Positions 45,654-49,179 of a stretch of DNA of 64,000 nt are shown one piece after another. Location: positions 62,001 through 126,000 of the IMG/VR virus record IMGVR_UViG_3300035212_003113; one strand, written 5' to 3'. The position numbers were made by a program, and so were the translations under genes. The notes beneath the pieces are model-generated. The model searched no databases. It was not told the origin of the DNA and saw only the letters and a list, made by a program, of their open reading frames with translations. How positions within the stretch are numbered: position 1 is the first letter of the stretch; each line of letters opens with the position of its first letter.

Positions 45654-45690
45654 GCGGCGCCGGCCCTAAAGTCGGACCCGCCCGATCCGG
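45653..45690 (+). promoter_or_regulatory. CCTAAA-N13-GATCC hairpin element, copy 12
   Basis: CCTAAA 45665-45670, GATCC 45684-45688. Confidence 0.8.
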
Positions 45691-46708: not shown

Positions 46709-46993
46709 ATGAATAAGAAAGTTGTTGCCGCTGTTGTTGCTGTTCTTGTTGCCGTTCTCGGTCTCGTCAAGGTCTTCTCGGGCTCGGATGAGGCTGCTGC
46801 CGCTGCCGTAACGGAGGCCGCTGCCGCCGTTGTTGGCGAGGGTGAGGGCGAAGCTGCCGCTACCGTTACCACGGATTCGGCTGCTCCTGTTGGTGCCGCT
46901 GCTGCTACGGCTGCTACGGCTGCTACGGCCGCTACGGCCGCTACCACGGCTGCCCCAGCCACGGCGCCCGCTGCTGATGCAGCTGCCAAGTGA
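46709..46993 (+). CDS. membrane-anchored Ala/Thr-rich low-complexity protein
   Basis: N-terminal TM helix then AAT repeats; AAGGA SD. Confidence 0.7.
   Translation: MNKKVVAAVVAVLVAVLGLVKVFSGSDEAAAAAVTEAAAAVVGEGEGEAAATVTTDSAAPVGAAAATAATAATAATAATTAAPATAPAADAAAK
46901..46945 (+). repeat. 5 x 9-bp tandem repeat GC(T/C)GCTAC(G/C)
   Basis: gctgctacg x3, gccgctacg, gccgctacc; encodes (AAT)5. Confidence 0.9.
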
Positions 46994-47017
46994 AAAAATA
47001 GGGCTATGCCCTCTTTA

Positions 47018-47077
47018 CTCCGTGTAAGCGGAGGATATAATCCTCCTAGCGGCGAAGAGCCGGAACTAGGAGGATTT
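47018..47077 (+). promoter_or_regulatory. structured 5' leader sequestering the Hsp20 SD
   Basis: AATCCTCCTAG (47039-49) is the perfect complement of CTAGGAGGATT (47066-76). Confidence 0.7.
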
Positions 47078-47377
47078 ATGTTTGATACGCTATCTCTATT
47101 TGATTCAATCTATTTTGTAGAAGAGGCCGATGGGCATACTATTATACACATTCCCATGCCAGGAGCTACAAAAGAGGACGTAGACATTGACGCTGAGCCT
47201 ACAAGGCTAGAGGTCAAAGTAAACACAGATAAGAAGCTGCCGTTCCTAAAGCAACGACGCTGGCGATTTACCCATAGACTGGGTAACCCAGAGGTTTCTG
47301 CAAAAGTAAATAACGGCGTTCTAGAGATTCGTATGTGCGAAGTAGGCCGTTCACGCTACCGCGTAGAGGTGGCATAG
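47078..47377 (+). CDS. small heat shock protein (Hsp20)
   Basis: MPGATKEDVDI, VSAKVNNGVLEI; AGGAGG SD. Confidence 0.85.
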   Translation: MFDTLSLFDSIYFVEEADGHTIIHIPMPGATKEDVDIDAEPTRLEVKVNTDKKLPFLKQRRWRFTHRLGNPEVSAKVNNGVLEIRMCEVGRSRYRVEVA

Positions 47378-47386
47378 CGAGGATAA

Positions 47387-48313
47387 ATGCTAGGAGTATG
47401 CTGCCAGTGGTTGAATGTCGTTCCTACAAAAACTGGTGAAAAATATGTTAACGCCCTAGGTGAACGCGCGCTTCAACTAGGGCGTTACTCTTCTGGCGCA
47501 TATACGCCGGAACACATAGCTGATGTATGGCTCGGTAATGTAAAAGGTTTGGCCAACATTATACCTACGGTACGCAGCGCCGGCGTAGGTATGTTTAGAG
47601 TGGGCAGCACGCTGCTGCCGCTCTTTGATAAGATCGCAGAGAGCCCGCTTAAAGGCCTGGTCGCAGATGCGGAGTCAGAACTGCGCAAGGTAGGCGCCCT
47701 CACTAACGGTATGAGGCTGACCACTCACCCCGGTCAATTCGTAGTAATTAGCTCGGATTCTGATACGGTCGTAGCTAACTCTGTTCGTGAGCTAGAGTAT
47801 CACGCATTTATCATGGACTCTCTAGGGTGCGCCGCAACGCCGCGGTTTGCAATAAATATTCATGGTGGCAAGCGAGATCGCGGAGATCGCTTGGTTGCTT
47901 CAATTAAGTCTCTGCCTAATTCAGTCCGATCCCGCCTTACGCTAGAGAATGACGAGAATTGCTGGTCTGTCGCTAACCTGCTGCCGATTTCTGAGCAAAC
48001 CGGCGTTCCGATTGTCTTCGACTCTCATCATCATCCATTTAATGATGGCGGTCTAACCGGCGAGGCAGCAATGCTTGCTGCCGCAAGTACGTGGCCAAGC
48101 GACATAAGACCGCTACAACACCTTAGTAATACAGAGCCCGGCTTTGAAGGCGGCTCATTTACAGAGCGCCGACAGCATAGCTGGGCAATTCATTATGTAC
48201 CGGATTATCAGCGAGACTTCTATCTAGCCGGTAAATCGGACATAGAGATGGAGTGCAAAGGCAAGAATCTAGGCTTTATTCCGTATGTAGATGCCCTCGG
48301 CATCTATTTATGA
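47387..48313 (+). CDS. uvsE: UV DNA damage endonuclease
   Basis: FRVGS.LLP, RLTTHPGQF, NIHGG, RLTLENDE, VFDSHHH, MECKGK. Confidence 0.93.
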   Translation: MLGVCCQWLNVVPTKTGEKYVNALGERALQLGRYSSGAYTPEHIADVWLGNVKGLANIIPTVRSAGVGMFRVGSTLLPLFDKIAESPLKGLVADAESELRKVGALTNGMRLTTHPGQFVVISSDSDTVVANSVRELEYHAFIMDSLGCAATPRFAINIHGGKRDRGDRLVASIKSLPNSVRSRLTLENDENCWSVANLLPISEQTGVPIVFDSHHHPFNDGGLTGEAAMLAAASTWPSDIRPLQHLSNTEPGFEGGSFTERRQHSWAIHYVPDYQRDFYLAGKSDIEMECKGKNLGFIPYVDALGIYL

Positions 48314-48708
48314 AATTAAGCGATTTTGTATTTAGGAATAAACACTTCTTCATCGACATGTTTGTCGATCCTTCCAATACAAAATCGCTTAAAGCGGTAG
48401 TAGATGACCTCAATGTATACAAATGGGGTATAGCTGAGCCAGGAGCTAGCGGCAGGATAATCCTGTCTTGCTCCAGTAATGGCGAGATACAGAAGTCTGC
48501 TACTCTAGCAGTACTACCCGAACAGCTAACGGTATTTTTCGCCTTCCTGCCAGAAGGCGATTACTGCCGGTCTGACTTTGATGGCTTAGATTATATAATA
48601 GACGTCTGGAGCGAAGGCTCTACCTTCTTTCGCTGCGGAGGTCTTGAGGTGGTAGTTTACCAGCAAGATTCGTTAGTCGAATTGATCAAGGCAGCCAACG
48701 AAGGTTGA
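48310..48708 (+). CDS. MKL-start hypothetical protein
   Basis: ATGA overlap. Confidence 0.6.
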   Translation: MKLSDFVFRNKHFFIDMFVDPSNTKSLKAVVDDLNVYKWGIAEPGASGRIILSCSSNGEIQKSATLAVLPEQLTVFFAFLPEGDYCRSDFDGLDYIIDVWSEGSTFFRCGGLEVVVYQQDSLVELIKAANEG

Positions 48709-49179
48709 ATCCTCGTAGCGCCGAATCTTCTTAATGATATTGCGTATGCGACCCGGTCGCTTAAGTACATTAGCCGCCAAGTCAAAGCGATTTAATATGT
48801 ATTCGTATATGTCTTTGACGCTACCGTTCGGCAACACAAAGCCTTCGTCGCAGAAATCGGCCATGATAATCTGCTTCTTCCCTTTGTTCGGCCAGCTGCA
48901 TATCTCGCAGAACAACAGCTTGCTGGCGCTATTTTGAAAGCAGCGTATTATTCGGCGATTGTTTACCCAGATCTCGGCTACCATGATGCGAGGCCCTTCT
49001 AGCTGCACTTCGCCATCTAACCAGTAGTTATAGCCAACGAACTTGCTGATAAAAGATTGGCCAGTGCCCAACTTAGCGACATTTAGTCTTATACCGAGGC
49101 TCTGCAATTTCACAACTAACTCGATTTCGATGCCTGGATTTCTGTGCTCTTTGCCACTTGCTGTAATGCTTCTGCACAA
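48673..49179 (-). CDS. hypothetical protein
   Basis: Only long ORF filling the gap; start uncertain. Confidence 0.45.
   Translation of the reverse strand: MCRSITASGKEHRNPGIEIELVVKLQSLGIRLNVAKLGTGQSFISKFVGYNYWLDGEVQLEGPRIMVAEIWVNNRRIIRCFQNSASKLLFCEICSWPNKGKKQIIMADFCDEGFVLPNGSVKDIYEYILNRFDLAANVLKRPGRIRNIIKKIRRYEDSTFVGCLDQFD

What the first reader, a model, noticed from the sequence alone, without database searches (positions are those of the whole stretch)
47000..47080. Bistable RNA switch in front of the phage Hsp20
Seen: the anti-SD AATCCTCCTAG (47039-49) pairs perfectly with CTAGGAGGATT (47066-76, contains the SD), capped by CGGC-GAAGA-GCCG. The same TCCTCC can instead pair with upstream GGAGGA (47030-35), which is itself held in CTCCG-TGTAAG-CGGAG (47018-33). 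These give mutually exclusive OFF and ON folds. Known: sHsp genes are commonly controlled by RNA thermometers, but this lacks ROSE/fourU mismatches. Inference: a new thermometer or switch, or TSS-dependent translational control like T4 late genes.
Basis: partly seen in the sequence, partly recalled or inferred. Interest (0 to 1): 0.68.

Follow-up and report, generated by a model that had tools for sequence, protein, structure and literature searches.

The report
Promoter-in-hairpin lock on phage hsp20
A very stable, evolutionarily conserved RNA hairpin buries the ribosome-binding site of a jumbo phage's small heat-shock gene, and it most likely works like the known phage T4 trick (a promoter inside the hairpin makes a shorter, translatable mRNA) rather than as a thermometer or two-state switch.

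Summary
AATCCTCCTAG (47039-49) pairs perfectly with CTAGGAGGATT (47066-76), and the helix is capped by CGGC-GAAGA-GCCG. The hairpin (H3) is conserved in 11 syntenic leaders from uncultivated relatives, down to 60% Hsp20 identity.

The two-state reading fails. The upstream GGAGGA exists only in this phage. The ON fold is about 11 kcal/mol worse than the OFF fold, and freeing the SD costs 16-21 kcal/mol in every lineage.

The thermometer reading is very unlikely. H3 is about -23 to -26 kcal/mol with a predicted Tm above 100 C, and the SD stays more than 99% paired up to 60 C.

A sigma70-type promoter footprint is conserved alongside the hairpin: TTTAC[T/C], a 16-17 nt spacer of free sequence, then TATAAT, which forms the 5' arm of H3. 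The predicted start at A47048 would drop the anti-SD. It would leave a 30-nt leader with a small 5' hairpin and an open SD (opening cost 2.8 versus 16.1 kcal/mol).

Best reading (confidence 0.45): T4-style control. Read-through mRNA is silent or terminated, and promoter-proximal mRNA is translated. No transcript data could be obtained, so the start site is inferred.

The parts
45665..45688 (+). Nearest upstream copy of the phage's own promoter-like motif CCTAAA-N13-GATCC. It is the likely origin of read-through transcripts that run through four small genes into the hsp20 leader.
   Evidence: 13 copies in the window, all on the + strand, 0 expected by chance; 76 copies in the genome. Conserved at the syntenic place in relatives.
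46709..46993 (+). Upstream ORF of 94 aa, Ala/Thr-rich with a hydrophobic N-terminus. Its stop codon lies 84 nt before the hsp20 ATG.
   Evidence: No Pfam or PHROG match. A gene of 75-84 aa is called at the same place in relatives.
46996..47016 (+). Hairpin H1: AGGGC-UAU-GCCCU flanked by an A-run and UUU. It looks like a weak intrinsic terminator.
   Evidence: Fold. The stem is kept with different sequence in relatives: GAGGGC/GCCCUC, AGAGGC/GCCUCU, GCCCUGUA/UACAGGGC.
47014..47019 (+). -35-like hexamer TTTACT. The string CTTTAC is invariant in all 11 leaders.
   Evidence: In the L073 clade it is not part of any stem, so pairing does not explain its invariance.
47018..47033 (+). Hairpin H2: CUCCGU-GUAA-GCGGAG, occupying the 16-nt promoter spacer. 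Its role is unknown.
   Evidence: Seven different stem sequences across lineages: CUCCG/CGGAG, CGC/GCG, UUGC/GCGG, CCCU/AGGG, CUCUG/CGGAG, CCCGA/UCGGG, CCGAU/AUCGG. A hairpin appears in the MFE of 8 of 11 leaders; in the L004/7/8 lineage only a weak alternative is possible.
47036..47041 (+). -10-like hexamer TATAAT. It is also the lower 5' arm of H3.
   Evidence: TTTACT-16-TATAAT, 10 of 12 matches. Invariant in relatives except TATGAT in L015, where the partner base in the 3' arm changed T to C.
47034..47084 (+). Hairpin H3, the RBS lock. It has an 11-bp core (47039-49 with 47066-76), an inner stem (47050-53 with 47059-62), a loop (47054-58), a bulge (47063-65), and an A-U lower stem that reaches the AUG.
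   Evidence: -23 to -26 kcal/mol, P(SD unpaired) 0.26% at 37 C, predicted Tm about 103-105 C.
47048..47049 (+). Predicted transcription start, 7-8 nt after the -10 hexamer. This is inferred, not mapped.
   Evidence: an A at the predicted +1 in all 11 leaders and a 28-30 nt 5' UTR. RNA from this start has an RBS opening cost of 2.8 kcal/mol, against 16.1 for read-through RNA.
47069..47074 (+). Shine-Dalgarno GGAGGA of hsp20.
   Evidence: Invariant in relatives.
47078..47377 (+). hsp20-like gene: 99 aa, a bare alpha-crystallin-type domain.
47387..48313 (+). uvdE (UV damage endonuclease) with its own SD, 10 nt after hsp20. Probably co-transcribed.
   Evidence: PF03851, E = 7e-49. Syntenic in all relatives.

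Best explanation
The 84-nt gap before hsp20 is a compact terminator-promoter-lock module. Transcripts coming from the phage-type promoter about 1.4 kb upstream meet a weak terminator (H1). If they read on, they fold the very stable hairpin H3, which buries the SD and the AUG. On these long RNAs hsp20 is translationally silent, and some of them may also stop at H3 with its U-rich tail. A sigma70-type promoter is threaded through the same DNA. Its -35 (TTTACT) sits between H1 and H2, H2 fills the 16-nt spacer, and its -10 (TATAAT) is the 5' arm of H3. RNA started there, at about A47048, lacks the anti-SD. It begins with the small CGGC/GCCG hairpin two bases from its 5' end and presents a free SD. 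Hsp20, and probably UvdE behind it, would therefore be made only when that promoter fires. Shown here: the structure, its stability, its conservation, and the conserved promoter-like footprint. Inferred: that the promoter is used, where transcription starts, and that read-through RNA exists.
For: The promoter-like site TTTACT-16-TATAAT matches 10 of 12 consensus positions. Such sites occur 63 times on both strands of the 372-kb genome, so about 0.005 are expected in this leader.

The footprint is kept in all 11 leaders, down to 60% protein identity: CTTTAC invariant, spacer 16 nt (17 once) with unrelated sequences, TATAAT invariant (TATGAT once), and an A at the predicted +1.

Variation in the lower stem falls on the 3' side in three of four cases (ATT-T, ATA-T, ATTAT, ATC-T). 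The 5' side stays TATAAT even where this leaves an A.A mismatch (L012). That pattern is expected if the 5' side carries a second constraint.

RBS opening cost is 16.1 kcal/mol in read-through RNA and 2.8 in RNA from 47048. P(SD unpaired) is 0.0026 versus 0.26.

The inner stem covaries (CGGC/GCCG to CAGC/GCUG) and would sit at the 5' end of the short RNA.

The phage has T4-like gene content: rIIA, RNA ligases and topoisomerase II subunits. T4 uses this arrangement for genes e, soc, 49 and I-TevI (PMC3014915). No phage RNA polymerase was detected, so host polymerase is probably used.
Against: The host is unknown. Sigma70-consensus sites are not enriched upstream of this phage's genes (3 observed against 4.2 expected). 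The phage's abundant promoter-like motif, CCTAAA-N13-GATCC, is quite different, so host polymerase in this system may not favour TTGACA/TATAAT. A conserved hairpin inside a promoter spacer (H2) is not needed by this model and remains unexplained. TATAAT could be conserved merely because it pairs with the SD-AUG spacer. A divergent phage polymerase could escape the Pfam searches.
Confidence: 0.45

Rival explanations
1. There is no internal promoter, and hsp20 is read only from the long polycistronic RNA. H3 is a constitutive lock that a trans-acting event must open: RNase III cutting the ~22-bp helix (as known for lambda N, T7 0.3 and E. coli adhE leaders, from my own knowledge), a helicase, or an RNA-binding regulator such as the sHsp itself.
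For: H3 is a near-continuous helix of about 20-22 bp with one bulge, the size class of RNase III substrates. H1 and H2 are conserved as RNA structures, which argues that this region is transcribed and matters as RNA. Both arms of H3 are under strong purifying selection.
Against: This reading does not explain the invariant single-stranded CTTTAC at a fixed 16-17 nt from TATAAT. It also does not explain why the 5' side of the lower stem refuses to covary. No nuclease site or protein partner can be tested here.
Confidence: 0.2
2. H3 is mainly an intrinsic transcription terminator or attenuator that insulates hsp20-uvdE from upstream transcription. Burial of the SD is a side effect.
For: The GC-rich core ends in GGAGGA and is followed by UUUAUGUUU. 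Codon 2 is TTT in all 11 relatives, although third positions are otherwise only 37-79% identical. Elsewhere in this genome, terminators abut start codons (genome 188459).
Against: The U-tract is interrupted and the base of the stem is A-U rich. The scan tool did not call it, although that tool cannot handle bulged stems. A terminator here still needs a downstream promoter to express hsp20, uvdE and the topoisomerase genes, so this is more a sub-variant of the main model than a replacement for it.
Confidence: 0.12
3. H3 is an RNA thermometer that melts on heat shock and releases the SD.
For: sHsp genes are classic thermometer targets (PMC3074152, PMC3669281). The SD is paired to an anti-SD.
Against: The SD is paired by 11 perfect base pairs plus 4 G-C pairs, with no mismatch or G.U opposite the SD. 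H3 is -23 to -26 kcal/mol with a predicted Tm of about 103-105 C. P(SD unpaired) stays below 1% up to 60 C. Opening cost falls only from 17.7 to 14.1 kcal/mol between 30 and 45 C. A real fourU hairpin melts at 41 C, and its A8C mutant, which melts at 53.5 C, is described as temperature-stable (PMC2887971). There is no Rfam match.
Confidence: 0.04
4. The leader is a bistable switch. The anti-SD alternates between the SD (OFF) and the upstream GGAGGA (ON), gated by hairpin H2.
For: In this phage alone, the nascent RNA is predicted to form GGAGGAU:AUCCUCC before the SD is made (P = 1.0), so a short-lived kinetic ON state is conceivable.
Against: The ON fold is -31.4 against -42.8 kcal/mol. GGAGGA is absent from all ten other leaders, where the nascent anti-SD is 3-51% paired. 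H2 is conserved without any SD-like sequence in four lineages.
Confidence: 0.04

Closest known systems
Phage T4 genes e (lysozyme), soc, 49 and I-TevI: an RBS-sequestering hairpin with a promoter in its 5' arm (reviewed in PMC3014915)
   Same: Long early or middle transcripts fold a helix that buries the SD and/or AUG. A promoter lies in the DNA that encodes the 5' strand of that helix, so the short transcript lacks the inhibitory arm. The phage here has T4-like gene content (rIIA, RNA ligases, topoisomerase II). The predicted difference in SD accessibility is about 100-fold, the size of the effect reported for T4 gene e.
   Different: The promoter here looks like a two-box sigma70 type (TTTACT-16-TATAAT), not the gp55-type TATAAATA, which is not enriched in this genome. 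A second conserved hairpin fills the spacer. The regulated gene is a chaperone, not a lysis, decoration or nuclease gene. Nothing has been mapped experimentally.
RNA thermometers of sHsp genes (ROSE, fourU, Synechocystis hsp17)
   Same: The element sits in the 5' leader of an Hsp20-family gene, and the SD is paired to an upstream pyrimidine stretch.
   Different: Thermometers use short, imperfect helices that melt at about 30-45 C; the fourU Tm is 41 C (PMC2887971). H3 is a perfect 11+4-bp helix with a predicted Tm above 100 C. No Rfam family matches.
PeSL terminator/promoter cassettes of T4-like phages (PMC2839356, PMC4122927)
   Same: A stem-loop and a promoter are packed between genes in the variable early regions of phages with T4-like gene content.
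   Different: PeSLs are repeated many times per genome and serve as recombination points. The hsp20 leader is single-copy. The repeated cassette in this genome is the different CCTAAA-N13-GATCC motif.
RNase III-processed leaders that unmask an RBS (lambda N, T7 0.3, E. coli adhE; from my own knowledge)
   Same: A long, nearly perfect helix includes the RBS in an intercistronic region of a phage polycistronic RNA.
   Different: No cleavage data exist, and the conserved -35/-10 footprint is not a feature of those sites.

Membership tests
T4-type promoter-in-hairpin translational control | A stable helix buries the SD and/or AUG in the long transcript. | tested here: met
   -23 to -26 kcal/mol, P(SD unpaired) 0.0026, opening cost 16.1 kcal/mol. 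The helix is conserved in 11 leaders.
T4-type promoter-in-hairpin translational control | A promoter lies in the DNA encoding the 5' arm, so the short RNA lacks the anti-SD. | tested here: inconclusive
   The sequence footprint is present and conserved: TTTAC[T/C]-16/17-TATAAT, with the predicted +1 at 47048 after the anti-SD. However, sigma70-like sites are not a general feature of this phage, and the host is unknown.
T4-type promoter-in-hairpin translational control | Two transcript classes with mapped 5' ends and different translation. | not testable with these tools
T4-type promoter-in-hairpin translational control | The promoter is of the gp55 late type (TATAAATA). | tested here: not met
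   The box is TATAAT followed by CC. TATAAATA occurs 10 times in the genome and 0 times in gene-upstream windows.
RNA thermometer (ROSE / fourU / hsp17 type) | An SD helix with mismatches or weak pairs that melts in the physiological range. | tested here: not met
   perfect pairing opposite the SD, predicted Tm about 103-105 C, SD more than 99% paired up to 60 C. For comparison, the fourU Tm is 41 C.
RNA thermometer (ROSE / fourU / hsp17 type) | A match to a curated thermometer family. | tested here: not met
   Rfam gathering and E-value scans gave no thermometer hit.
Bistable RNA switch | Two mutually exclusive folds of comparable energy, both conserved. | tested here: not met
   The gap is 11.4 kcal/mol. 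The alternative pairing partner is absent from all relatives.
Intrinsic terminator | A GC-rich stem directly followed by a U-run. | tested here: inconclusive
   H1 has a 5-bp GC stem followed by CUUU. H3 has a strong stem followed by an interrupted UUUAUGUUU. Neither was called on the + strand by the scan.
Hsp20 / alpha-crystallin family (the protein) | An alpha-crystallin domain recognisable by profile. | tested here: met
   PF00011 scores 21.5 bits (cut-off 20.8) and PF17886 24.3 bits (cut-off 22.5). All 20 PDB profile matches are sHsps, but they are weak (E = 0.001 to 0.9). One source names a relative an HSP20 family chaperone.

The most novel reading that the evidence does not exclude
The module may be more than a T4-style lock. 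The promoter's spacer is itself a structurally conserved hairpin (H2): seven different stem sequences over a constant 16-17 nt. The lock is so stable that read-through RNA would need an active opener. This leaves room for a new composite element in which a promoter and three RNA hairpins are co-encoded. Expression of the phage chaperone would then be set by an extra input, such as processing of the long RNA, a stress-titrated RNA-binding protein like the sHsp itself, or a spacer whose DNA structure tunes promoter strength.
Probability: 0.12. Interest if true: 0.65.

Novelty: new member of a known kind. Interest (0 to 1): 0.4.

Why it matters
If the promoter is real, the T4 promoter-inside-the-lock design extends beyond the Tevenvirinae. 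It would operate in a deeply divergent, uncultivated 372-kb phage clade, with a two-box sigma70-type promoter instead of a gp55 late promoter, and on an auxiliary stress module (Hsp20 plus UV endonuclease) rather than lysis or homing genes. It is also a caution for scans. An anti-SD hairpin in front of an sHsp gene is not automatically a thermometer. Stability and conservation of the alternative fold need checking first.

Tried and rejected
- **Thermometer:** rejected on predicted stability.
- **Bistable switch:** rejected on energy and on lack of conservation of GGAGGA.
- **Rfam:** no family matched at gathering or E-value thresholds; the weak hits lie in the GCT-rich upstream ORF.
- **T4 late promoter TATAAATA:** not enriched.
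- **TATAAT as a general promoter box of this phage:** not enriched (18 of 186 copies lie within 120 nt of a start; sigma70-like pairs at 3 observed against 4.2 expected).
- **TGTAAG in the H2 loop (47023-28):** it matches a hexamer enriched upstream of genes at 126-349 kb, but it is not kept in relatives (AATAAG, TATAAG, TGTAGC and others), so I treat it as coincidence.
- **Longer ORF from ATG 47006 (123 aa):** rejected, because that ATG sits in the H1 loop and is absent from relatives.
- **CIRCE or HAIR heat-shock operators:** consensus recalled from memory; no resemblance; not formally tested.
- **Cultured-phage databases:** no DNA or Hsp20 match, and the topoisomerase is at most 34% identical to known phages.
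- **Cellular genomes:** only 28-33% identical sHsps, so no host clue.
- **Distant phage Hsp20s (24-32% identity):** the four leaders read and folded lack this element.
- **The palindrome pattern in public contigs:** 22 viral and 106 metagenomic stretches, roughly the number I estimate by chance; only the hsp20 loci are related.
- **Not run:** the large representative protein search, structure prediction and complex prediction, because the family scans sufficed.

Full report
**Context**

The window is bases 62001-126000 of a 371,675-bp virus record with direct terminal repeats. It is rated complete and has 51% GC. Genes run almost all on the + strand. The window encodes rIIA, two RNA ligases, a 2'-5' RNA ligase-like protein, UvdE, both topoisomerase II subunits and an FtsK-like ATPase. 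This is T4-like gene content in a jumbo phage.

No cultured phage is close. There is no DNA match, and the topoisomerase is at most 34% identical to known phages. No phage RNA polymerase was found by Pfam search, and there is only one weak sigma-like ORF.

**The observation**

The gene starts at ATG 47078 and encodes 99 aa. It scores just over Pfam's HSP20 and ArsA_HSP20 cut-offs. Its profile finds only small heat-shock proteins in the PDB, weakly.

RNAfold of 46994-47100 gives three hairpins:
- H1 (46996-47016) looks like a weak terminator.
- H2 (47018-47033) is CUCCGU-GUAA-GCGGAG.
- H3 (47034-47084) buries the SD and the AUG.

The whole fold is -42.8 kcal/mol, with z = -4.94.

**Relatives**

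A word search found five Hsp20 clusters at 76-89% identity. Their contigs are syntenic: small genes, an 84-nt gap, hsp20, uvdE, and later the topoisomerase genes. A pattern scan of public contigs added a clade at 60% identity, loci L073, L134 and L139.

All 11 leaders fold in the same way. The exception is H2 in the L004/7/8 lineage, where only a weak alternative hairpin is possible.

- **H3.** The core never varies, and two compensatory events are seen. One is A-U to G-C in L015. The other is G-C to A-U in the inner stem of the L073 clade. The H3 region is 84-95% identical where third codon positions are 37-79% identical.
- **H1 and H2.** Both keep their stems with different sequences in different lineages.

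**The switch and the thermometer**

- **ON fold.** The upstream GGAGGA that should compete for the anti-SD occurs only in this phage. The best fold using it is -31.4 kcal/mol against -42.8. Freeing the SD costs 16-21 kcal/mol in every lineage.
- **Stability of H3.** It is -23 to -26 kcal/mol, with a predicted Tm of about 103-105 C.
- **Temperature response.** The SD is more than 99% paired up to 60 C. The RBS opening cost falls only from 17.7 to 14.1 kcal/mol between 30 and 45 C.
- **Comparison.** A fourU hairpin melts at 41 C, and its A8C mutant, which melts at 53.5 C, is described as temperature-stable (PMC2887971).
- **Rfam.** Nothing matches.

Both readings are therefore set aside.

**What else is conserved**

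The promoter scan reports TTTACT (47014-19), 16 nt, then TATAAT (47036-41), matching 10 of 12 consensus positions.

Across all 11 leaders:
- the -35-like box is TTTAC[T/C];
- the spacer is 16 nt (17 once) with unrelated sequence;
- the -10-like box is TATAAT (TATGAT once);
- an A sits at the predicted +1.

CTTTAC is invariant even in the L073 clade, where it belongs to no stem.

In the lower stem of H3, the 3' side varies (ATT-T, ATA-T, ATTAT, ATC-T). The 5' side stays TATAAT, even at the price of a mismatch in L012. The one change in the box, in L015, keeps the key -10 positions and is compensated on the other arm. This is the pattern expected if the 5' arm is also a -10 element.

A start at about 47048 removes the anti-SD. 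It leaves a 30-nt leader that begins with the covarying CGGC/GCCG hairpin. RBS opening cost drops to 2.8 kcal/mol, and P(SD unpaired) rises from 0.0026 to 0.26.

**The known precedent**

T4 genes e, soc, 49 and I-TevI have the same logic. Long early transcripts hide the RBS, and a late promoter in the DNA for the 5' strand gives a short, translatable RNA. For gene e the effect is about 100-fold (PMC3014915).

Here, read-through RNA would come from the phage-type motif CCTAAA-N13-GATCC at 45665. This motif has 13 copies in the window and 76 in the genome, all on the + strand, and it is kept at the same place in relatives.

**Caveats**

- The promoter is inferred from sequence only.
- Sigma70-consensus sites number 63 in the genome against about 50 in shuffles, and they are not enriched before genes.
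- The phage's own repeated motif is unlike TTGACA/TATAAT.
- The host is unknown.
- H2, a conserved hairpin in a promoter spacer, has no role in the model.
- RNase III processing, a trans-acting opener, or termination at H3 with its UUUAUGUUU tail remain possible, alone or combined with the promoter.

**Verdict**

The bistable and thermometer readings are not supported. It would be a new member of a known kind.

Noticed in passing
window 540, 7427, 10581, 17336, 21741, 27731, 30207, 34221, 37581, 44181, 45665, 53475, 61237 (each 24 nt, + strand): The motif CCTAAA-N13-GATCC(TG) occurs 13 times in the window (0 expected) and 76 times in the genome. All copies are on the + strand, 13-100 nt before genes, and confined to genome 0-125 kb and 350-371 kb. 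In the 350-368 kb block each copy follows a GC hairpin plus a T-run. It looks like the phage's own early promoter or PeSL-like cassette and is unlike sigma70 consensus. It is conserved in relatives, including the L073 clade.
   Followed up: partly
window 47449-47487: A 16-nt inverted repeat (94% complementary, about -21 kcal/mol) lies inside the 5' part of uvdE. It is kept at -20 to -25 kcal/mol in relatives with 74-94% UvdE identity, despite synonymous changes, and weakens to -13 in the L073 clade.
   Followed up: partly
window 46709-46993: The ORF before the leader encodes a hydrophobic N-terminus followed by an Ala/Thr-rich tail built partly from 9-nt GCTGCTACG-like repeats (about 46903-46945). 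It has no family match, and its length varies (75-94 aa) among relatives.
   Followed up: no
genome 139062-140774 (outside the window): The phage encodes a 570-aa GroEL-like chaperonin, judged from its N-terminal sequence. The only perfect TTGACA-17-TATAAT in the genome lies 82 nt upstream of it, inside the preceding ORF. A second chaperone gene thus also has a sigma70-like site.
   Followed up: partly
genome 168561-168616 (outside the window): An IMP dehydrogenase/GMP reductase-like gene, judged from its N-terminal sequence, also has an SD-burying hairpin (AUCUCCUG with CAGGAGAU), preceded by GATATAT. The RBS is 82% paired in the ensemble.
   Followed up: no
genome 126-349 kb, gene-upstream regions: The hexamer TGTAAG (TGTAAGA) is enriched 24-75 nt before genes of the presumed late or structural region: 10 observed against 1.1 expected. 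It is a candidate late-promoter element. T4's TATAAATA is not enriched.
   Followed up: partly
L024 1608-1649 (IMGVR_UViG_3300041402_000314, unrelated 204-kb viral contig): The same anti-SD/SD palindrome occurs with a canonical TTGACA-17-TATAAT laid over it, so that the anti-SD lies in the promoter spacer and the -10 in the loop, followed by an ATG. This appears to be an independent example of a promoter threaded through an RBS lock. L102 and L126 have TATAAA directly before the anti-SD arm.
   Followed up: no
genome 177957-178745 (L144 1351-2139): A 262-aa ORF has weak sigma-factor region 2 similarity (PF04542 at 22.2 bits, below the cut-off; phrog_1740 at E = 2e-4). It is a possible phage sigma factor. 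No phage RNA polymerase was detected.
   Followed up: partly
window 48673-49179 (- strand): A lone minus-strand ORF (168 aa here, 146 aa called in relatives) lies between the uvdE block and the topoisomerase genes. It is conserved in position in all longer relatives and has no family match.
   Followed up: no
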